NCBI GenBank assembly: GCA_965240325.2
Contig: OZ251226.1
Location: forward strand, 1,984,001 to 2,048,000
Direction: 5' to 3'
Source of the DNA: Rebecca billardiae RCC1528
Taxonomy: Eukaryota > Protista > Haptophyta
DNA: 64,000 nucleotides
Shown here: positions 33,114-42,895 of the stretch, piece by piece
Numbering within the stretch: position 1 is the first letter of the stretch
Layout: the number at the start of each line of letters is the position of its first letter
Made by a program: the position numbers and the translations under genes
The notes under the pieces: generated by a model
Databases searched by the model: none
What the model saw: only the letters and a program-made list of their open reading frames with translations
What the model was told of the DNA's origin: nothing

Positions 33114-34540
33114 GGTTATGAATCGCGCGCGGGAACGCCCTCGGGCTACCCGCGTCAATGATATCTCGTCGCCCGCGAGGGTTCGTGCGAAACGGTGCGA
33201 AGACGTCCTGCTATAATACTTCCCTTCGCGGGCCACCCGGCTTTAAGAGATATTACCCGTGTATGAATCTTAACCTGATGATATCCGCCCCTGAGAAGCG
33301 ACGGTTCATGACTTCAGATGCCGGCATAATACTTTACTTCAAGCGACATAAAAGCCGACCCAACCTCTCAGTCTCTTTTCTATGGTTGGCGAGCTGTTTC
33401 AGGCCCTTACAATTCAGCCATCTTACTTTGACGGAATGTTCTAACACACGGCTGGTGTTATGTGCTATTCCACCCTGCATTCCCCTAAGTGTTACTATCG
33501 TTAAAATTAAGGGGCAGTACAAACGCAATCATTGCGGCAGCGATATCCACTCATACGCTAGGCAAGGCCACCTACAAAAACCCCAAAATCCTGCGCGCAT
33601 CCTCTTTTTGATTTTGCGGAGCACGTGCGCCGCCCCCCCCCCGGCTTTCGCTCACGCTCAGACCTTTCGGGGGGGGGGGGCGTGCGCCATAAACTAATAC
33701 TCATCAACTAAATAATATATATATATGTCTAGCCGTCCTCGAAGCGCCTGCGCCATCCAGATGCAGCGAGGAGGCGAGGCACACGCCGGGCAGGGCGGAG
33801 CCACGCTGCGAGATACCAGACTCTATACATTGAATAAGGGATTTTTGTTCCTCGGAAACAAAGTGCGAGCGGCAGCCGCTCAGGCCGAGCGCGCAGCTTG
33901 GAAGACGCAGCTCGAGAGCCGCCAAGCCGCACGAGAGCGAGGCACGAGGCACCATCGTGCAGAGGCGGGCGCCCTGAAAGATGCGGGCCCAGAACAGCTG
34001 CAGCCATCAGGACAGTGGGCGCTTCCGAAACGAAGGGCGTCGTCCGCTGCGTGAGCGAGAGAGACACAGGGCCGCGTCGGTCGGCTCGGCGCCAGATGAA
34101 AGAATCCAGGCCACCAATTGGCTGTCCAGAGCCACCATGCCAACCCGCTCAAAGCTCAGGAGCAGCACAACGACTTAGCTAGTTCTGGGCCGTTGTGCGC
34201 GCGCACAGAGCAGGCTCGAAAAACCCTCGTGGCACGAGAAGAGGGTGGCCAAGATGGCAGCCGGACTTGCGCTCGGCCGCCTGCCTCGGGCCGATTGGCA
34301 GGCAGGTGTTGATACCATACGGCGCATTGCGCTCCCACCGTCCTCTTAGACAATCAGTTATTGTGCCAATAACCCGCCCACATATAACCGCGCGCTCACC
34401 AATCGGCACGGTCCGCGCGGCTCGGACGCGGTGCGGACCAGCGGACCGGACTGAGGATGTCGTCAACGACAAAGCCGGACGAGCCAAGCTACAAACTGTA
34501 GTATAACGCCGAACGTCCGTGACGATCACGAGACCTCGTT

Positions 34541-36314
34541 CTACATCAGATCGGTCTGCTTGTCCAGCTGCTCGCCCGTCAGCCACGCGGTGTGGAACCC
34601 AAACGGCACGCGCCGGGGCAGCTGCACCACAGCTGCGAGGCTCAGGTCCCGCGCGGCGTACAGCCGGAACTGCGACGTGTTGCGGGCCTCGTCAAACACG
34701 ATCAGACCGAGATGCCCGCGGTCCTCATCGGCGCCGCGGGTCGGTGAGCCCAGCGGGTCGGCACGGCCTGGTGGCACGTACGACGCTTCGCCGCCGAGCA
34801 TCCCGGCGCCCAGTGGCGCGCGGGCGACTGCCGCGCGCTCGACCAGGTCGTACTTGACCAGCGCATCGAAGCCAACGCGGCCGCTCCGGTCGAAGCTCGC
34901 CACGTACGCGTACCGGTTGGGCGCGCCGGCGAACGCATCGTTGATGCGCGGGAACTCGAAGGGCTGCGCCCAGCTGTGGCGCTGCAGCTGCGCCGTGGCG
35001 GCGTCGGCGTCCAGGACGACGGTCACCATCGAGCACGTCGTCTCCGAGCCCGAGCCGTCGAGGAAGCCCGGGTCGAACACGTCGTACCAGCAGCCGTGGA
35101 CGAGCACGCGCCGCCCCCCCTCCTCCTCCCACGCGTTGGCCACGTGGAAGATGTGCCCGGCCGCGTCCAGCGAGCACCAGACAGCCGGGGATGCGGCAGC
35201 ACTGCCGGCGGGCTCGCCGGCCTCGAGCGCCGCGCGCGGCACGAGGCCGAAGCGCGCGTGCGCGCCGCGCTCCCAGTAGATGCTCCTGCCGCGCTGCACG
35301 ATCCCCTGCGGGTGCGCGCGCAGCGAGCCGTCCAGCAGGATCACCCAGGACGCCGAGATCGCCATCTCGTGCATGAAGGGCATGCCGATGCCTTCGGACG
35401 CCGACGGGAGCGGCACTGGCAGCGGCGCGGAGAGGCGGCCGTCCGCGCTGATCTGGCGCACGGTGACGGGCCTCGTCTCGGGCGCGTCCGGCCCCGCCCA
35501 CGCGCACACGAACACGAGCGCGCCCGTCCGCGGGTCGAGCTTGGGGTGCGCGGTCATGCAGTGTGCGAGCCGGCCGCCCAGAGAGTCAAAGCCCGCGCTC
35601 GAGATCTCCCCGCGCTCGCGGCCGATGCGCACGCGCAGCGGCAGGTTGGGCTCGACGAGGGCCCACACGCGGTCGCGGAAGAAGATCACATTCGTGTTCG
35701 CCACCGACGAGCGCTCGAAGGGCAGCTCGGGCACGGCGCCGACCCTCTGCCAGAACAGCTCGAGGAGCAGCTTGAGCAGCCCAACGGCGCCGCTCTGCAT
35801 GTCGCCGATCTTGGAGTAGAGCGCACGGCCGGCGCGGCGCTCGGCGGCGAGGCGCGGCGTGCGCACGAACGCGTTGCAGTAGTGCGCCACGCCACCGCGC
35901 ACGCGCACCGTGTGCAGGTGGCCGTCGCCGTCAAACCTGGGCCGCGCGGCGTGGCGCGGGTGATGAGGCGTCGCGTGAGAGGTGAGCGTGGGAGCCGCGA
36001 GGTGTGTGCGGCCATCGAACGCACCAGTGGTACTTGCCCCGGGGCGGCAGAGCCGGGTTGGGCCCCTGCCTGATGAACACACCGTCGATGTCGGCCGGGA
36101 TGGCGCCCTCGATCACGGGCAGGTCCGAATCACACCGCTCGTCATGCACGGGCGCAAAGTTACCGTGCAGGTAGGGGTTGTTCGCCGTGTGATTGTGCGT
36201 GCCGTCGAGCGCGTTGAGTATGGCGGTCAGCGGCGAGTACTTGGGCGACGTCAGCGCGATGGCAACCATGCCCACCACAGCACCTGTCCGCCACGGCAGC
36301 GCGGCCACACCCAT
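34541..36314 (-). CDS. CCD: Carotenoid cleavage dioxygenase (CCD/RPE65 family), ~561 aa; exons 36314-36025 and 35936-34541
   Basis: NPYLHGNFAPVHDE, GAIPADIDGVFIRQGPNP; intron 36024-35937 (GTGCGT..CCCAG) restores HWFDGDG; four Fe-ligand His contexts TAHPK, FMHEMAIS, FHVANAWE, PFGFHTAW; EFPRIND. Confidence 0.93.
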
Positions 36315-36650
36315 GGCGGTCGGCACCGCGGCAGGGCTCTGGATCCCTCACCACACTTCTTTCATCACACACCCATGGCTCTCTTGTCTTCCCGCCGCCG
36401 TCCAAAATCCTCTGCAGCACGACTGCACGAGGCTGCGCGGATTTCGTGATGCATGATTTCGTCGCGCGCACGCGCGGGCGCGGCGCCCGCGCGGGCAACG
36501 GTCTCGGGCTCGCCGGCGGCCGGCCGCGGAAAAAAAAAGAATCGCGACGAATATCCGATCGAGACGTCTTCGGAGGTCGGACGGGCTCCGACGTCGAAAC
36601 CCGTCACGCACGCCCGTCCAGCAGCTTGCCCGTCCAGAGTCACCGCACTC

Positions 36651-39600
36651 ATGTCCTCCAGCTCCCTCGACGGCGACGATCGCATCTCCGCGCATCCCAG
36701 CTCTACGCTCGAGCCCCGCCAAGACACCACCAACCGCGTCAATGCTTCCGCACACCGCGACAACGCGCCCACCGCCGATGGCGAGGCCAACAGCCACATC
36801 ACGGAGCGCGCCGCCGCGGCGGGCGGCCCGGAAGACGAACGCCACGTGCGCTTCGACGTTGCGCTCGTGTTCGCGCGCGCACACTCAAGCTCTTTCGAGG
36901 GCCACGCACCCAACGCGCCCTCGCGCGACGTGCTCGTCCGCCGGCTGCGCGCCATCGGCCTGGGCGTGCGCGAGCTGGCAGCCATCGATGCGCTGAACGA
37001 GCACAAGCACCTGTTGCTGATCGGCGCGACTGGCGCGTGGCTCGAGCTCGCGGCCGAGCGCGCAAGGCTGCGCCTCCGCCTCCGCGCGGAGTACGGCGGC
37101 GGCTACGCCGCCTTCACGCGCGAGCGCGCGCACATGTTCGTCCCGGCGCGCGCTGACGGCGGCGCGGCGTCCGCGCTGCTGCACTCTGCGCAGCGCGCCG
37201 CGCTTGTCGAGCGAGCCCTCGGCGCGCCGAGGCACGAGGAGGGCGCGGAGGTCGACCTGGCGGCGCTGCGGCGCGGCGGTGGCTTTGAGCGCCAGATGCG
37301 CCTCCACGACCCGCGCGAGCGCCGCGGCCTCGAGGCGCGCGTCGGAGAGGGCTCGCTGATCGGCGCAGATGCGCTGCCCGCGCGCCGCCTGCGTTCGTAC
37401 TTGGGCGCGGAGCAGAGCGAATATTTGGCGCTGCAGCACCGGATGTCCCGCGCGCTCTGGCTGCCGGCGAGCGTGGGCGTCCTGCTCGCCGCGCTCGAGG
37501 CGGGCGTGAGCGCCTCCGGCGCGGGCGTGCTCACCCCTCTGTACTCGCTGCTGCTGCTTCTCTGGGCCTCTGCGTTTGTCGAAGGCTGGCGGCGGCGCGA
37601 GGCGGCGCTCGCGGCGGAGGCGGAGGCGGCGGAGGGCGCGGAGGCCGAGCGCGGCGGCGGCACGCGCGCCGAGTTCGTCGGCGAGCTGCGCCGCGGGCTC
37701 ATCGCCCCAGCCACGCCCACCGCGCCCGGCGGCGGCGCGGTGGCGGACGGCGGCGCGCTGGCCTTTGCGCCCGTCGCCCTCTCGGAGCTGCCCAGCGGCA
37801 TGCTCGCGCCCGTCGTCGAGGTGGCGCCGGCGGGCGAGGCGTGGCGGCGCGCGGCAGGCTCCGCCGCGTTGGTCACGCTCGCGCTCGGCGCGACGTGCAC
37901 GTGCGCCCTCGCGCTGCTCGCGCTCCGCGTCGCGCTCACGCGCGCGGCGGGCGCAGCTGGCATGCTCGGCGGCGCCGCGCTCAACTCCGCTTACGTCGAG
38001 CTGGTCGAGCGACTGTTCGCGCGGGGCGCCGAGCGGCTGACGGCGTGGGAGAACCACCGGACGCACGCGACGCACCGCGCACACCTCATCGCGAAGCTCG
38101 TCGCCTTCTCCGCCGTGCACCGCTTCTTCGCCCTCTTCTACGTCGCGTTTGCGCGCGGCCGCGGCGCGCTGCTGCCTGGCTCGGGCGCGGACGCGGACGC
38201 GTGCGTGCATTGGAGCGCCGCGGGCGCGGCGGAGGGCGGGTGCATGGACGAGCTGCGCATGCAGGTGCTCGTGCTCACACTCGGCCGCTCGCTCGCCGCG
38301 CTTGCCATCGAGCGAGCCGCGCCACTCTGGGAGCGCCGCCGCGCGTGCGAGCGCGACGCGGCCGACGCGGCCCGGCGCGCGGGGCTCGAGCGGCGCGCAG
38401 CGTGCGAGCTCCGCCTGCGTGCGTCCGAGCCGGTCGACGGCGCGATGAACGCGCTCGCGTGCGACTTTGCGACGGTCGCGCTGTTCGCGACGGCGTTCCC
38501 GCTCGCGCCCGTCCTCGTCCTCGTGAACAACTTCAACTCGATGCGCGGCGCGATGCTCCGCTCGCTGCGGCTGCGCGCGCGCCCGTCCGCCGCCGCCGCG
38601 GACGAGGCCGCCGCGCGCGCCGGCGCAAGCACCTGGAGCCATGTCTTGAGCTCCATCAGCTACCTCGCGGTGGTGACGAACTTTGCGATCCTCGCGTTCA
38701 CCTCGCGGCACCTCGACGCCGTGGTCGCGCTGAGCGACAGCGCCAAGCTCATCCTGCTCATCGTGATCGAGCACGCCGTGCTGCTGGCGAAGGCGGCGGT
38801 GGCGCACGCGCTCCCCAGGCTGCGGCCGGCGCTCGCGGCCGCGATTGCCAAGCGGCAGTGGCTGGCGCGCGCGTGGGCGGAGGACGAGCGGCCGGCGTAC
38901 GCGAGCGTGTCGGGCTGGGTGGAGGAGGACGCGGCGCTGCGCGCCGAGGGCATCGACCTCGACCTCGGCGCGGACGCAGACGGCTCGGACGGCTCGCAGG
39001 CCGACTCTGCGGAGGCGGAGGATGAGGGGCGCGCCGCGGCCGGTGGGTCGTGCGGCGGCGGCGGCGGCGCCGCCGCGGCCTCGCTGCACGCGGAGCTGCT
39101 CGCGCCGCCGGACGCGCCGCCCGACGACGAGGAGCACCGCGAGGGCTGGACGCCGTTCAACGCCCTCGTCGCGCGCCGCGCGCCGCGGCAGTGCACGGAC
39201 GTGCTCTGCGTGCTGCTGCTTCTGCTCACGTTCGGAGCCCTGGTGACGCTCACGACGGTCGGGCATGTCGTCGGCCCACTGAGCGCGCTGAGCGCGGGGC
39301 GGGACACGCGCTTCGACCTGTGCGGCCACGCGCTGCCCGCGGCGCGGCTGGACGCGCGGCTGCTCGCGCGAGACGCGAGCACCCCGCCCGCCGCCCCCGT
39401 CGCCTCGGCGGGCGCCGACCGCACGGCCACGCCGCAGCTTTTCCTCGCAGACCCGGCGCGTCACGTGGGCGTGTGCGTGCGAGCGTGCCCGAGTCCCGCG
39501 CGCGCCGCGGACGGCTTCGAGCCGTCCGCGCTGGTGTGCACGCCCGAGTGCGAGGGTCTGGAGGGCGAGGCGCGCGCCGGTGCCCTCGGCACGTGCTGCT

Positions 39601-41987
39601 TCCCCGCCTACGCCTCGACCGCCGTCAACGGCTACTGCCGGCCGGACGACGGCGTGCGCGCCACCGACCTCGCGGCCGCGTGGGCGCGCGCGCCGCTGCC
39701 GGCTGGCGCCCGCCGCTCCTGGCCGTCGGACGTGGAGCTGGAGAGCGTGCGCGAGCTGACGGCGTCGGCGGGCAAGGGCGTGGGCGACGCGTTCGCCGAC
39801 CTCGCGCGCACCTGGCGGCTGCTCGTCGGCTGCGGCGTCGGCGCCTTTGTCCTCGGCGCCGCGCTGGCCGCGCGATTTGAGCGCGCGCCAGTGAGCACGG
39901 TCATCGCCGCGCTTGTGCTGGCCATTGTGGGCGGCGCGGTGGTGACGGGCGCGCTGTGGGCGGCGGGCGAGCGCGAGATGCGCGAGCACTACGCCGAGCC
40001 GGACTCGCCCGCGTACCGCAACGCGCACTCCGTCGCGGTCTTCGGCTACATGGCCTGCGTCGCGACGGCGGTGGGCACCTTCGCTTCCTTCTTCGCCTCG
40101 TCGACCGTGGTCGTGCGGATTGGGCACGCGACCGCCGAGGTGCGCGAGGCGCTGGGCGCGGTGCCCGCGCTGCACGCGCTGCCCGCGCTCGGCGCGCTGG
40201 GCACGCTGTGCGTGCTGCTCTGGTGGTTCTTCACCGCCGCGCACCTCGCCGCGTCCGGCGAGCTCCACCTCGCCGCCGGCACTGGATTCCCCCTGCCCAC
40301 GTTTGATTCCGCGCTGATGCGGCTGCTCGCTGCGCACGCGCTCGCCGGCCTCCTGCTGCTCTCGCTCGTGCAGCACGTGCTGCGCATGGCGGCGGCGGCG
40401 GTCGCGGCGTCGTGGTACTTCCGGCGCAGCCTTCCCACCGCCGCGCCCGCAGCCGGCGGCGCCAAGCGCGGCGCGGCCGGCGAGGCGGCCGACGGCTCTG
40501 CCGAGCGCGACGACGACGAAGACAGCGCGCTGGCGCTGCCTCCGGAGCCGACCGCACGCGCGGCGCTCTGGTTCGTTTGCCGGTACCACCTCGGCTCGGC
40601 GGTGTACGGCGCGCTCGTGCTACCGCTCACGCGGCCGATTCGCGCCGTCGCGTGGCTCTTCCGACCGTGCCGCCTCGGCGCGACCCCCAGCGCCGAGCGC
40701 GGCGAGCCGGACCCGCTGAGCGCGTGCTGCGGCACGTCCGGCGCTGCCGACGCTCTGTTTGCACTCAGCGCGGACGCGTACGCCGTGGTCGTCGCCGCCG
40801 ACCTGCCGCTGCTCACGTCGGCGCTGGCGACGTGGCGGCACCAGCTGCGCCAGCCGAACACGTGCGCCGCGCACACGCAGCAGGCTGCAGACGTGTGCTT
40901 CTTCGCTCTCAAGCTCGCCGGCGGCGCGATCGCGTCAGCCGTCGCGGCTGCGGTCCTGACCAGCGCCACTGTGGGCATGGGCCAGCAGCTGGGCGCGTCC
41001 CTGCTCTGGCCGATCGCCATCGCCTTCGTGCTCGGGTGCGCGCAGCCCGCCGCATCGCCCCTCCACCCCGCCCAAGCACGCACGCAAGCCCCGCTTCGGT
41101 GCGCCTGCACTCACCGCGGCCGCGCCCACACCGCGCGCCTCCGCCCTCCGTCCATCCGCCACCCTCGGCCCGAGCGCAGATACCTGGCCGTCTCCCAGTT
41201 TGTGCTCGTGCACGAGGCGGTGCTGTCGGCGCTGACGGCGTGCTACATGCTCGACGTGCTGCACAACTCGGCGCACGCGCTGCACGCCTCGGCCAACATG
41301 CGTCACATCTTCACGCCCGGACGGCGCCCGGGCTGGATGGCACCGGCACCGGCGCGCGGCGGTCTGCAGGGCAGGCCCGCGGCCGCGGGCTGGCCCCTGG
41401 CCGGCCGGTCCGCCAAGCCTGGGGCCCCGCCCGAGGCCGGTCTCGCAGAGTCGGCAGCCGCGACTACTCTCGAGCGCGACGCCTCCGCCGCTGGCGCCAG
41501 CTCCCTCGCCTCCGCAGCGTCGGCCGTGTCCGCAGGCTACCCGCGCGAGCCCACGCCACCGTCGCCGCCGCCCTCGCTCGAGCCGCCCGCGGCCTCCCTC
41601 TTGAAGGGGCGGCTCTTCTCGGCAGAGCCCGAGCGGCGGCCCGAGCCGGAGGAGCCTGCCCATGCCGCGGGCGCAGCACGCCCTGCCGAGCCACCCTTCG
41701 CCCCGCCCCAGGAGTACCCCGCCGCCTCCCTCGCGCACCACGCCGGGCCGTACGGTCAGCAGGCCTCCTCTGGCGCTGAGCAGCACGCTGGCAGCGAACC
41801 GGCCGCAGCCGCAAGCCTCCGAGGAGCGGAGTTTTACCCGCCACCGCAGTCTCGACGACACCACGCGCAACGACAGCAGCCACCGCGCTTGTCGCCCGCG
41901 CGGGGTGACGACTGGCAGGGCGACCAGGGCGTGCCTTCTCCGCCTGCTGTCGTCGCAGAGTCCTCCACGTCTTCGTTCTATCTCTGA
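36651..41987 (+). CDS. Anoctamin (TMEM16)-like domain fused to a choline transporter-like (CTL/SLC44) domain, ~1730 aa; probable in-frame intron 41036-41179
   Basis: TMEM16 motifs: LRSYLGAEQSEYLA, LTAWENHRT..LIAKLVAF, FFALFYVAF, CMDELRMQV, LFATAFPLAPVLVLVNN, WSHVL..ISYLAVVTNFAILAFTS. CTL motifs: RQCTDVLCVLL, GRDTRFDLCG, VCVRACP, RYHLGSAVYGALV, DAYAVVV, FVLVHEAVLSALTACYMLD. Single open frame. Start could be further upstream (36453). Confidence 0.85.
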   Translation: MSSSSLDGDDRISAHPSSTLEPRQDTTNRVNASAHRDNAPTADGEANSHITERAAAAGGPEDERHVRFDVALVFARAHSSSFEGHAPNAPSRDVLVRRLRAIGLGVRELAAIDALNEHKHLLLIGATGAWLELAAERARLRLRLRAEYGGGYAAFTRERAHMFVPARADGGAASALLHSAQRAALVERALGAPRHEEGAEVDLAALRRGGGFERQMRLHDPRERRGLEARVGEGSLIGADALPARRLRSYLGAEQSEYLALQHRMSRALWLPASVGVLLAALEAGVSASGAGVLTPLYSLLLLLWASAFVEGWRRREAALAAEAEAAEGAEAERGGGTRAEFVGELRRGLIAPATPTAPGGGAVADGGALAFAPVALSELPSGMLAPVVEVAPAGEAWRRAAGSAALVTLALGATCTCALALLALRVALTRAAGAAGMLGGAALNSAYVELVERLFARGAERLTAWENHRTHATHRAHLIAKLVAFSAVHRFFALFYVAFARGRGALLPGSGADADACVHWSAAGAAEGGCMDELRMQVLVLTLGRSLAALAIERAAPLWERRRACERDAADAARRAGLERRAACELRLRASEPVDGAMNALACDFATVALFATAFPLAPVLVLVNNFNSMRGAMLRSLRLRARPSAAAADEAAARAGASTWSHVLSSISYLAVVTNFAILAFTSRHLDAVVALSDSAKLILLIVIEHAVLLAKAAVAHALPRLRPALAAAIAKRQWLARAWAEDERPAYASVSGWVEEDAALRAEGIDLDLGADADGSDGSQADSAEAEDEGRAAAGGSCGGGGGAAAASLHAELLAPPDAPPDDEEHREGWTPFNALVARRAPRQCTDVLCVLLLLLTFGALVTLTTVGHVVGPLSALSAGRDTRFDLCGHALPAARLDARLLARDASTPPAAPVASAGADRTATPQLFLADPARHVGVCVRACPSPARAADGFEPSALVCTPECEGLEGEARAGALGTCCFPAYASTAVNGYCRPDDGVRATDLAAAWARAPLPAGARRSWPSDVELESVRELTASAGKGVGDAFADLARTWRLLVGCGVGAFVLGAALAARFERAPVSTVIAALVLAIVGGAVVTGALWAAGEREMREHYAEPDSPAYRNAHSVAVFGYMACVATAVGTFASFFASSTVVVRIGHATAEVREALGAVPALHALPALGALGTLCVLLWWFFTAAHLAASGELHLAAGTGFPLPTFDSALMRLLAAHALAGLLLLSLVQHVLRMAAAAVAASWYFRRSLPTAAPAAGGAKRGAAGEAADGSAERDDDEDSALALPPEPTARAALWFVCRYHLGSAVYGALVLPLTRPIRAVAWLFRPCRLGATPSAERGEPDPLSACCGTSGAADALFALSADAYAVVVAADLPLLTSALATWRHQLRQPNTCAAHTQQAADVCFFALKLAGGAIASAVAAAVLTSATVGMGQQLGASLLWPIAIAFVLGCAQPAASPLHPAQARTQAPLRCACTHRGRAHTARLRPPSIRHPRPERRYLAVSQFVLVHEAVLSALTACYMLDVLHNSAHALHASANMRHIFTPGRRPGWMAPAPARGGLQGRPAAAGWPLAGRSAKPGAPPEAGLAESAAATTLERDASAAGASSLASAASAVSAGYPREPTPPSPPPSLEPPAASLLKGRLFSAEPERRPEPEEPAHAAGAARPAEPPFAPPQEYPAASLAHHAGPYGQQASSGAEQHAGSEPAAAASLRGAEFYPPPQSRRHHAQRQQPPRLSPARGDDWQGDQGVPSPPAVVAESSTSSFYL

Positions 41988-42895
41988 CCGTGTACGTCGG
42001 GGTGACAGGCGATGTCGTGATGTGTATCCATATACTAGTGATATAGCGTCGTCAACCGCTGACGTGTAAAGACACCGCGCCACTGTCGTTACTGCTAGCT
42101 ACTGCTCAGATCAGGGACGAGCGCGTTGGCACCGGAAGGCAGCTGCGAAAGACGCCGCGGGCCGCGCGTCACAGCTGAATCACCAGAATGGCGCAGCAGC
42201 TGCGAATCGAGCTCGGCTGGCTCGCCAAGCAGCCGGTGCGCGTGAAACGCCGAGATCGAATCTAACGAGTCGGTAGCTTTGACGAGCCTCCTTAGTGAGC
42301 GGATATACTGTCATACTGCAGCTTTGTCGCCTGGCTGCAGCAGACGAGTCGCGTAGATGAAAGCCAATAAATAAGCCAATCGATGACGGATGAGCTGCAT
42401 GGAATATTGCTGGACGACCGAGGTCGTAGTCATTGATGAATCATATACACGCTAGTAGCTGCTTGTATGCGATGCTTATTGATGGCGGAGATGGTGAGCG
42501 CTCTGTGGTGATTGCTCCGTTGCCAGCGAAATGATCGATGGCGCGGATTAATTTGCATAGCGCATGTGTCCGCCATGATGCTGTAGGCGCAAACAGTCAT
42601 ATAGTACTTATAGCGCGCGCTTCACCAGAGACGTCAGACGACCGGTCGACCGATTGTCTCATCGTCAGCACGAACGACTACGCGTACCTTCGTCTGCTGT
42701 AGTCATACTCCGCAGCGCAGGATAGCTAGAACATCGTCGTCCTGATTATACACAACAGCAGTCGACGGCCACTGCCGAAAGCAGGCGCAGTTCGCCTCAC
42801 AGGAGTTATTTGCAGCCGACGGGCGGGACGGGCCGCCATCTGCGCCATGCGGAAGAGAATAAGCAGCGCAGTGGCAGGGGCCACGCTCGCCACTG

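What the first reader, a model, noticed from the sequence alone, without database searches (positions are those of the whole stretch)
38425..38565. The TMEM16 half of the fusion appears to have lost its Ca2+-binding acidic residues
Established: TMEM16 Ca2+ sites use acidic residues in TM6-TM8 (consensus E-Y-x-E-M-x-x-Q-F-G-Y and N-N-x-x-E-x-R-x-D). Seen: the equivalent segments read DGAMNALACDFATVALF and VNNFNSMRGAM, lacking the conserved E/E and E/D, while the neighbouring FPLAP motif is intact. Inference: a Ca2+-independent, constitutive or partner-gated scramblase, possibly regulated by the fused CTL module.
Basis: partly seen in the sequence, partly recalled or inferred. Interest (0 to 1): 0.7.

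Follow-up and report, generated by a model that had tools for sequence, protein, structure and literature searches.

The report
Calcium-blind TMEM16 half of algal fusion
One of two sister genes in a very GC-rich haptophyte-type alga that join a TMEM16 lipid scramblase/channel to a choline-transporter-like protein has lost the calcium-binding residues of the TMEM16 part while keeping its fold, so the alga holds a calcium-competent and a calcium-blind version of the same protein side by side.

Summary
In the 1,844-codon ORF 36453-41987 (+), with a likely start at 36651, residue-by-residue alignments to solved TMEM16A, F and K structures show the following.

- **Main Ca2+ site:** Ala, Ala, Ser and Ala stand at the four TM7/TM8 acidic ligands. 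Leu stands at the polar TM6 ligand. Only the TM6 Glu is kept.
- **Third Ca2+ site:** the TM10 Asp is Arg.

The loss is specific to this gene.
- Every other member of the same haptophyte fusion family (ankyrin-TMEM16-CTL) that could be aligned keeps at least four of the five main-site acidic ligands. This includes a paralog (P0002) from the same sequencing run.
- Of 114 well-conserved TMEM16 columns, this protein keeps 93. All five acidic ligand columns are among the 21 lost (hypergeometric p about 1e-4).
- The fold is predicted with confidence (pLDDT 87) and is closest to TMEM16K.

The TMEM16 half evolves about five times faster than its sister's, is Ala-enriched, and lacks the ankyrin repeats.

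My best reading is a Ca2+-insensitive, subfunctionalised paralog, comparable to yeast IST2 but reached by different substitutions. Whether it scrambles lipids is untested.

The scan had noted the ankyrin-bearing sister gene, and another anoctamin with a degenerate Ca2+ site, elsewhere in this genome.

The parts
36651..41987 (+). Whole gene (P0001, 1,778 aa from Met67 of the ORF that opens at 36453): TMEM16 N-terminal cytosolic domain, 10-TM TMEM16 domain, acidic linker, CTL/SLC44-like module, low-complexity tail
   Evidence: ORF. Pfam Anoctamin plus Choline_transpo. GC3 of 0.88-0.98 runs in one frame over nearly all of aa ~120-1620, including the linker (lowest 0.83-0.87 at aa 271-330 and 1531-1590). 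A single tblastn HSP to paralog P0002 spans 36510-40907. The identical gene call appears on a Logan contig.
37392..38849 (+). TMEM16/anoctamin transmembrane domain (ORF aa 314-799)
   Evidence: Pfam PF04547 at 193 bits, E 9e-57. AlphaFold2 model of ORF aa 126-836 has pLDDT 87 and pTM 0.89. Best Foldseek match is human TMEM16K, E 1e-21, TM 0.77.
38301..38312 (+). TM6 ligand positions: Leu617 in place of the polar N/Q ligand; Glu620 retained
   Evidence: Alignment to mTMEM16A N650 and E654. Column counts are N56/Q45 and E101 of 135.
38442..38453 (+). TM7 ligand positions: Ala664 and Ala667 in place of the E/D-x-x-E pair (codons GCG and GCG)
   Evidence: Paralog P0002 and the Diacronema proteins read E-Y-N/C-E-L here.
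38496..38510 (+). F-P-L-A-P motif between TM7 and TM8, intact
38526..38552 (+). TM8 ligand positions: Asn692 kept, Ser696 in place of Glu, Ala700 in place of Asp
   Evidence: The Asp column is D in 129 of 135 domains.
37581..37583 (+). TM2 Glu377 of the third (TM2/TM10) Ca2+ site, retained
   Evidence: Aligned to TMEM16F E395. The site is defined in PMC7786149.
38817..38819 (+). TM10-end Arg789 in place of the nearly invariant third-site Asp
   Evidence: Aligned to TMEM16K D615. The column is D in 45 of 49 other sequences. Relatives read P-D-V-P (or S-D-V-P in P0003) where this protein reads P-R-L-R-P.
38850..39146 (+). Acidic, poorly conserved cytosolic linker between the two modules
   Evidence: GC3 is 0.93-0.98 in the same frame. 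The alignment shows a variable linker in all family members.
39147..41312 (+). CTL/SLC44-like module (from the W-T-P-F ... R-Q-C-T-D-V start to the last conserved helices)
   Evidence: Pfam PF04515 at 63.8 bits. It is 49% identical to P0002 over 685 aa. In the CTL tree it is sister to P0002 with 99/100 support.
41036..41179 (+). Probable in-frame 144-nt intron (GT...AG) inside the CTL module. This is inferred, with no RNA evidence.
   Evidence: Sequence. GC3 dips locally. The 46-residue translated stretch (Q-P-A-A-S ... P-E-R-R) reads as low-complexity, non-CTL-like sequence, and the paralog's call also stops looking CTL-like near here.

Best explanation
The gene is a lineage-specific duplicate of an ankyrin-TMEM16-CTL fusion gene that is typical of haptophytes. 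After the duplication this copy lost the N-terminal ankyrin repeats. It also lost the acidic ligands of both Ca2+ sites of its TMEM16 module:
- Main site: four of five acidic ligands changed to Ala, Ala, Ser and Ala, and the polar TM6 ligand changed to Leu.
- Third site: Asp changed to Arg.

It kept the complete TMEM16 fold, most conserved positions and the CTL module. The TMEM16 half therefore cannot be switched by Ca2+ in the canonical way.

Shown here: the substitutions, their restriction to this paralog, the retained fold and the open reading frame.

Inferred: the module still works as a Ca2+-independent lipid scramblase or membrane-thinning unit. Activity would be basal or constitutive, as in yeast IST2 or in Ca2+-site mutants of fungal TMEM16s. 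It would act next to its CTL half, while the sister gene P0002 supplies the Ca2+- and ankyrin-regulated version.
For: - **Ligand mapping:** from solved-structure alignments and from 135- and 50-sequence alignments.
- **Relatives keep the ligands:** the other family members aligned over the full site keep 4-5 main-site acidic ligands, and P0161, P0004 and P0008 show intact acidic TM7/TM8 motifs. P0002, P0003/P0151, P0154, P0160 and P0161 were also checked for the third-site Asp and keep it. P0012, P0010, P0004 and P0008 were checked at the main site only.
- **Paralogy:** P0001 and P0002 come from the same run, ERR14847148, at similar GC. They are sisters in the CTL tree with 99/100 support and in the best TMEM16 tree with weak 71/41 support.
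- **Targeted loss:** 93 of 114 conserved columns are kept, yet all 5 acidic ligand columns are lost.
- **Not simple decay:** 68% of sites invariant in four relatives are kept. The frame is open for 5.3 kb with strong GC3 periodicity. The AlphaFold2 model has pLDDT 87 and pTM 0.89. Foldseek gives E 1e-21 to TMEM16K.
- **Precedent:** IST2 lacks the site and scrambles constitutively (PMC12618243).
Against: - No expression data could be obtained.
- The TMEM16 half has a terminal branch about five times longer than its sister's (1.02 against 0.20), while the CTL half differs 1.8-fold (0.61 against 0.34).
- Its Ala content is 24.7% against 13.0%, and its aromatic content 6.1% against 12.0%. Several near-invariant aromatic residues are lost. 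These signs fit relaxed constraint or a non-catalytic role.
- Unlike IST2, no Lys or Arg replaces Ca2+ in the main site.
- From my own knowledge, not checked here: engineered neutralisation of these ligands usually leaves only low basal activity rather than a constitutively open groove.
- dN/dS could not discriminate.
Confidence: 0.45

Rival explanations
1. Pseudo-scramblase scaffold. The TMEM16 half no longer moves lipids or ions. It is kept only as a folded dimerisation or targeting platform for the CTL half, or as a silent partner in heterodimers with the Ca2+-competent paralog P0002.
For: The acceleration is about five-fold and confined mainly to the TMEM16 half. Ala doubles and aromatic residues halve in that half only. 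Near-invariant Trp, Phe and Asn positions are lost outside the Ca2+ sites. The ankyrin repeats are absent. The TM10 region keeps its E-H motif, but the end of TM10 is altered.
Against: The groove-forming helices TM4-TM6 keep their signature motifs, W-E-N-H-R-T, L-I-x-K-L and C-M-D-E-L-R-x-Q. The losses are enriched at Ca2+ ligands rather than spread evenly. A scaffold role would not need so much of the catalytic architecture to be conserved.
Confidence: 0.28
2. Young decaying duplicate. The gene, or at least its TMEM16 half, is on the way to pseudogenisation after a 5'-truncated duplication, and the Ca2+ ligand changes are part of neutral, GC-driven drift towards Ala codons.
For: Three of the ligand changes are Glu/Asp to Ala, with GCG codons, which is the direction expected under GC pressure. 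The branch is long and the composition shift is strong. No RNA evidence exists. No ortholog sharing the changes was found.
Against: There is no stop or frameshift in 1,778 codons, despite about 50% amino-acid divergence from the sister. GC3 periodicity is intact. Conserved sites changed at about half the rate of variable sites. The CTL half is well conserved. The AlphaFold2 model is confident. Neutral decay over that distance should have broken the frame many times; this last point is an inference.
Confidence: 0.12
3. The protein is still Ca2+-regulated, but through a non-canonical route, for example Ca2+ sensing by a partner, by the retained TM6 Glu and TM2 Glu, or by the paralog in a heterodimer.
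For: E620 (TM6) and E377 (TM2) are kept. TMEM16 proteins are dimers (established knowledge). A Ca2+-competent paralog exists in the same organism.
Against: One carboxylate per site cannot build the known sites. No EF-hand, C2 or other Ca2+-binding domain was found by Pfam down to E = 1. Heterodimerisation at about 50% identity is untested.
Confidence: 0.1
4. Artefact of assembly, frame or alignment.
For: The genome is very GC-rich and long spurious ORFs occur, for example the 1,234-aa antisense ORF at 36885-40589.
Against: Non-ligand residues on both sides align exactly: D-F-A-T, L-F-A-T-A-F-P, V-L-V-N-N-F and L-R-L-R-x-R-P. An identical sequence appears in a second assembly. Five separate codons are involved.
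Confidence: 0.02

Closest known systems
IST2 of Saccharomyces cerevisiae and other Saccharomycetaceae (TMEM16 homolog; PMC12618243)
   Same: It is a TMEM16 fold without the conserved Ca2+ site, carrying a large extra module on its cytosolic C-terminus, and it belongs to the TMEM16K/fungal-like branch. IST2 is experimentally a constitutively active, Ca2+-independent scramblase.
   Different: - IST2 substitutes three of five acidic residues, and a Lys takes the place of Ca2+. Here four of five are replaced by Ala, Ala, Ser and Ala with no basic substitute, and the third site also carries Asp to Arg.
- IST2's appendage is a disordered tether that binds OSH6 and the plasma membrane. Here it is a second polytopic membrane protein (CTL).
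- The loss here arose independently inside a haptophyte fusion clade.
Ankyrin-TMEM16-CTL fusion proteins of haptophytes: Diacronema lutheri KAG8468294, KAG8459200 and KFE25_008260; Chrysochromulina tobinii KOO35990; and the same-organism paralog P0002
   Same: The TMEM16-linker-CTL order is the same. The group forms one clade with 99/99 support. The protein is 49-53% identical to P0002 in both halves.
   Different: All of them carry N-terminal ankyrin repeats. The window protein has none. All keep 4-5 acidic ligands of the main site, and those checked keep the third-site Asp.
Human TMEM16K/ANO10 (ER scramblase; PDB 5OC9, 6R7X-Z)
   Same: It is the best sequence and fold match among solved structures. 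It has the same 10-TM architecture and N-terminal cytosolic domain.
   Different: TMEM16K binds two Ca2+ at TM6-8 and a third at TM10/alpha10 (PMC6718402; PMC7786149). Those ligands are replaced here. Sequence identity is about 19%.
Engineered Ca2+-site mutants such as afTMEM16 D511A/E514A (PDB 7RXA)
   Same: Acidic ligands are replaced by Ala. The mutant structure appears among the fold matches (rank 15).
   Different: Those are laboratory double mutants of an otherwise canonical scramblase. Here the change is natural, involves both sites, and comes with many second-site changes.

Membership tests
TMEM16/anoctamin | Sequence match to the Anoctamin transmembrane domain above Pfam's curated threshold | tested here: met
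   PF04547 at 193.4 bits against a cut-off of 28, covering profile positions 2-458 of 460. The score is lower than the 282-314 bits of the pavlovophyte-clade relatives and P0010's 255, and close to P0012's 198.5.
TMEM16/anoctamin | Ten-helix membrane fold with an N-terminal cytosolic domain | tested here: met
   AlphaFold2 gives pLDDT 87 and pTM 0.89. Foldseek top hits are all TMEM16K, afTMEM16, nhTMEM16, TMEM16F or TMEM16A, with E down to 1e-21.
TMEM16/anoctamin | Two-Ca2+ site formed by five acidic residues on TM6-TM8 | tested here: not met
   Only the TM6 Glu (E620) remains. A664, A667, S696 and A700 replace the others.
TMEM16/anoctamin | Third Ca2+ site (TM2 Glu plus TM10-end Asp) | tested here: not met
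   E377 is kept and the Asp is replaced by R789. Site definition comes from PMC7786149.
TMEM16/anoctamin | Lipid scrambling or ion conduction; homodimer | not testable with these tools
   This needs reconstitution or electrophysiology.
CTL/SLC44 (choline transporter-like) | Match to Pfam Choline_transpo above threshold, with an N-terminal TM1, a Cys-rich loop and a multi-TM core | tested here: met
   PF04515 at 63.8 bits against a cut-off of 26.9. The R-Q-C-T-D-V start and the Cys-rich loop are conserved with P0002.
Haptophyte ankyrin-TMEM16-CTL fusion family | TMEM16 and CTL in one polypeptide; one clade with the other fusions | tested here: met
   One frame with continuous coding periodicity. 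The fusion clade has 99/99 support. The same architecture is found in 8 relatives.
Haptophyte ankyrin-TMEM16-CTL fusion family | N-terminal ankyrin repeats | tested here: not met
   No Ank hit down to E = 1. tblastn with the Ank regions of P0002 and P0154 finds nothing in the 64-kb window. A divergent RPE65 gene lies immediately upstream.
IST2-type constitutive scramblases | Ca2+ site absent | tested here: met
IST2-type constitutive scramblases | A basic side chain (IST2 K443) takes the place of Ca2+ and bridges the retained acidic residues | tested here: not met
   The equivalent position is Ala667. The only charge swap is Asp to Arg at the third site.
IST2-type constitutive scramblases | Common descent with the Saccharomycetaceae IST2 clade | tested here: not met
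   The protein nests inside the haptophyte fusion clade, next to Ca2+-competent proteins, so the loss is independent. No IST2 sequence was included in the trees.

The most novel reading that the evidence does not exclude
The alga keeps a matched pair of scramblase-CTL machines. One is gated by Ca2+ and ankyrin-mediated contacts. The other is locked 'on' by a mechanism not yet described for TMEM16 proteins: an Ala/Ser-lined, uncharged main pocket that removes the electrostatic repulsion that displaces TM6, plus an Arg-Glu salt bridge in place of the third Ca2+. This would be a second, independent natural route to a constitutive TMEM16 scramblase. It would also offer a handle on what a scramblase does next to a choline or ethanolamine carrier, for example head-group supply coupled to leaflet equilibration.
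Probability: 0.2. Interest if true: 0.65.

Novelty: new variant of a known kind. Interest (0 to 1): 0.4.

Why it matters
Ca2+ binding at TM6-TM8 is the defining switch of TMEM16 channels and scramblases. The only well-studied natural exception is yeast IST2.

Here nature provides a controlled comparison inside one organism. Two sister genes share the same TMEM16-CTL architecture. One has all Ca2+ ligands and the other has lost both sites by a different set of substitutions.

Comparing the two could show which second-site changes are needed to run, or to silence, a TMEM16 module without Ca2+. It could also help explain why haptophytes weld a scramblase to a choline-transporter-like protein, a fusion for which two full-text searches found no description.

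It is not a new kind of system, and activity is untested, so the value lies in a testable lead rather than a surprise.

Tried and rejected
- **Word-index protein search with the TMEM16 half:** nothing passed the threshold, probably because Ala-rich words swamped the candidate list. A second search on residues 440-760 found only a third Diacronema paralog and one distant protein, and it missed P0002. Absence of close orthologs is therefore only weakly supported by these two searches. The exhaustive HMMER search was used instead.
- **RNA evidence:** The look-up of sequencing runs listed no run, so read laying could not be used. Expression, the transcript start and the proposed intron remain untested.
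- **dN/dS between the window gene and P0002:** NG86 omega was 0.73-0.98 for both the TMEM16 and the clearly conserved CTL half. Synonymous sites are pinned by a GC3 of about 95%, so the result is uninformative and was rejected as a test.
- **BLASTP of P0001 against P0002:** it printed only the CTL half as a significant alignment. The TMEM16 half was aligned with MAFFT instead.
- **Chance concentration of changes judged against P0002 alone:** this is only marginal, p = 0.017 within TM7-TM8 and 0.03-0.06 over the domain, because overall identity is 50%. The family-wide conserved-column test is the informative one.
- **New Gly at TM6 position 611 as a hinge:** the column is variable across the family, so I draw no conclusion.
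- **Open or closed state from the AlphaFold model:** the top fold matches mix closed and open states, and coordinates cannot be inspected. This was not used.
Full report
**What is at the site**

The window is 59-82% G+C in 2-kb windows. It holds an uninterrupted 1,844-codon ORF at 36453-41987 on the + strand. Pfam finds Anoctamin at ORF aa 314-799 (193 bits, cut-off 28). It also finds Choline_transpo at aa 1228-1528 (63.8 bits, cut-off 26.9).

Third-position G+C is 0.88-0.98 in this one frame over nearly all of aa ~120 to ~1620, dipping to 0.83-0.87 at aa 271-330 and 1531-1590. The ~100-residue acidic linker between the two modules is included. The two domains are therefore one coding unit, not two genes joined by a chance open frame. 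Periodicity is weak before aa ~90. The independent gene call P0001 starts at Met67 (36651).

**Mapping the Ca2+ ligands**

HMMER alignments to solved structures can be counted residue by residue. The chain numbering reproduces the published ligand numbers of mouse TMEM16A: N650, E654, E702, E705, N730, E734 and D738.

| mTMEM16A ligand | Window protein (ORF numbering) |
|---|---|
| N650 | L617 |
| E654 | E620 (kept) |
| E702 | A664 |
| E705 | A667 |
| N730 | N692 (kept) |
| E734 | S696 |
| D738 | A700 |

One of the five acidic ligands of the two-Ca2+ site survives.

The same output aligns TMEM16F E395 with E377, and TMEM16K D615 with R789. According to PMC7786149, E395/D859 of TMEM16F and E259/D615 of TMEM16K directly coordinate the third Ca2+. 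The third site has therefore lost its Asp to a charge reversal, while the partner Glu remains.

**Is this more than general divergence?**

- In a MAFFT alignment of 135 TMEM16 domains from the exhaustive search, the four TM7/TM8 columns are acidic in 118-129 sequences.
- In that set, 93 domains have all five acidic ligands and 27 have four. Only four, including this one, have one or none.
- In a separate 50-sequence alignment (A1), 114 columns are at least 85% conserved by residue class among the other 49 sequences. The window protein keeps 93 of them.
- The 21 lost columns include all five acidic ligand columns, plus the Tyr next to the first TM7 ligand. My hypergeometric calculation from those counts, C(21,5)/C(114,5), is about 1.4e-4.
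- Judged against the sister paralog alone, the test is weak (p 0.017-0.06), because overall identity is only 50%.

**Relatives**

The exhaustive profile-free search found full-length matches covering both modules. Names and accessions come, except P0161.

| Protein | Length and identity | Source |
|---|---|---|
| P0002 | 1,767 aa, 51% | Same run as the window gene |
| P0003 / P0151 | 1,336 aa, 40% | JGI/IMG and Logan assemblies, unnamed |
| P0154 | 1,957 aa | *Diacronema lutheri* KAG8468294 |
| P0160 | 2,426 aa | *D. lutheri* KAG8459200 |
| P0161 | 2,095 aa | *D. lutheri* KFE25_008260 |
| P0012 | 1,797 aa | *Chrysochromulina tobinii* KOO35990 |
| P0010 | 2,015 aa | ENA assembly, unnamed |

Fragments include Pavlovales sp. 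CCMP2436 (P0157).

Pfam shows ankyrin repeats, Anoctamin and Choline_transpo in the full-length proteins that include an N-terminus: P0002, P0154, P0160, P0010 and P0012. The family is an ankyrin-TMEM16-CTL fusion. It spans the two branches of the family tree: the clade with the Pavlovales proteins and the clade with *Chrysochromulina*. It forms one clade in a TMEM16 tree with 99/99 support.

Every member aligned over the full site keeps four or five acidic ligands of the main site. P0161, P0004 and P0008 show intact acidic TM7/TM8 motifs. P0002, P0003/P0151, P0154, P0160 and P0161 were also checked at the third site and keep the Asp. The outgroups are acidic too, so the state in the window gene is derived.

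**The sister gene**

- P0001 and P0002 were both assembled from run ERR14847148.
- The P0001 contig is identical to window 34357-42234.
- The P0002 contig has the same extreme G+C.
- The scan had independently noted an "ankyrin-anoctamin-choline transporter-like triple fusion" on another piece of this genome (s1-353129).
- In the CTL tree the two are sisters with 99/100 support. In the best TMEM16 tree they are sisters too, but weakly (71/41).

I read them as in-paralogs that duplicated after the split from the *Diacronema* lineage.

The window copy has no ankyrin repeats. Pfam finds none. tblastn with the Ank regions of P0002 and P0154 finds nothing anywhere in the window. A divergently transcribed RPE65-family gene sits directly upstream. 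A 5'-truncated duplication would explain this; that is an inference.

**Signs of constraint and of relaxation**

The terminal branch of the window protein is 1.02 against 0.20 for P0002 in the TMEM16 domain. In the CTL domain it is only 0.61 against 0.34.

| Composition | Window protein | P0002 |
|---|---|---|
| TMEM16 half, Ala | 24.7% | 13.0% |
| TMEM16 half, aromatic | 6.1% | 12.0% |
| CTL half, Ala | 22.3% | 17.4% |
| CTL half, aromatic | 7.2% | 7.8% |

Three ligand changes are to Ala, with GCG codons. That is the direction expected when constraint is lifted under GC pressure.

Against decay:
- 68% of the positions invariant in four relatives are retained.
- Signature motifs of TM4-TM6 and TM9-TM10 are intact.
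- The frame is open for 5.3 kb at about 50% divergence.
- AlphaFold2 models ORF aa 126-836 with pLDDT 87 and pTM 0.89, and above 88 around all the ligand positions except TM6 (82-89).
- Foldseek places the model with TMEM16K, afTMEM16 and nhTMEM16 (E down to 1e-21).
- dN/dS was uninformative because synonymous sites are compositionally pinned.

**Interpretation**

Canonical Ca2+ activation is excluded as far as sequence can show. The same module is fused to Ca2+-competent TMEM16 domains in all relatives, so the fusion predates the loss.

The closest functional precedent is IST2. It lacks the site, carries a large C-terminal appendage and scrambles constitutively (PMC12618243). IST2 uses a Lys in place of Ca2+. 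Here the main pocket is uncharged, and the only basic substitution is at the third site.

My ranking is:
1. A Ca2+-insensitive, subfunctionalised paralog with basal or constitutive scrambling (0.45).
2. A folded but inactive scaffold or heterodimer partner (0.28).
3. Early decay (0.12).
4. Non-canonical Ca2+ control (0.10).
5. Artefact (0.02).

**Novelty**

TMEM16 proteins without the Ca2+ site are known (IST2). My sample also shows degenerate sites in *Protostelium* and *Planoprotostelium*, an *Aphanomyces* protein, and several unnamed environmental proteins. Independent loss is therefore not rare.

What is new is the context. The loss is paralog-specific and hits both sites, inside an ankyrin-TMEM16-CTL fusion family for which two full-text searches found no paper. 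An intact sister gene in the same genome serves as a natural control.

**Limits**

- None of the public RNA runs could be listed.
Only its nearest relatives point to a pavlovophyte-type haptophyte.
- The word-index searches performed poorly on this Ala-rich protein.
- No structure coordinates could be inspected.

Noticed in passing
window 36651-41987; relatives P0002, P0154, P0160, P0161, P0010, P0012: The ankyrin-Anoctamin-CTL triple fusion is a conserved haptophyte gene family. Diacronema lutheri has three paralogs, and the family is also found in Chrysochromulina tobinii and Pavlovales sp. CCMP2436. Two full-text searches found no paper describing it.
   Followed up: partly
window 41036-41179: A probable 144-nt in-frame intron (GT...AG) lies inside the CTL module. 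Its translation is a 46-residue Pro/Arg/Ala/His-rich stretch that does not read as CTL-like sequence. Splicing would join ...F-V-L-G to Y-L-A-V-S-Q. There is no RNA evidence.
   Followed up: partly
window ~41310-41987 (ORF aa ~1620-1844): The C-terminal tail is Pro/Ala-rich, and GC3 periodicity weakens (0.68-0.83 over most of the tail). The true stop, or a further intron, may differ from the ORF end.
   Followed up: no
window 34541-36082 (-): The divergent upstream neighbour is an RPE65/carotenoid-oxygenase-family gene (Pfam PF03055 on the Logan gene calls). It leaves under 600 bp for a shared promoter region and no room for ankyrin exons.
   Followed up: no
window 36885-40589 (-): A 1,234-aa antisense ORF runs opposite the gene. 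I take it for a by-product of about 95% GC3 and not as evidence of a gene.
   Followed up: no
P0024 (Protostelium nocturnum), P0029 (Planoprotostelium fungivorum), P0095 (Aphanomyces invadans), P0030, P0072, P0139 (environmental): Other TMEM16 domains among the nearest 135 also have two or fewer acidic ligands. The two amoebozoan proteins share the ligand pattern Q-N-K-Q-N-N-Y, with a Lys at the first TM7 ligand position (the column of mTMEM16A E702). IST2's Lys, by contrast, replaces the second TM7 ligand.
   Followed up: partly
P0007/P0158 (MMETSP transcripts) against P0157 (Pavlovales sp. CCMP2436): The MMETSP transcript ORFs start with about 45 residues that look like an out-of-frame reading of the TMEM16 TM10 region seen in frame in P0157. 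This suggests the transcript crosses the TMEM16-CTL junction in that relative.
   Followed up: no
same genome, other pieces (scan notes s1-360772, s1-355127, s1-353018): The scan lists further unusual anoctamins in this genome: one with a degenerate Ca2+ site plus IPT/TIG domains, a tandem double TMEM16, and TMEM181-anoctamin fusions. I did not examine them.
   Followed up: no
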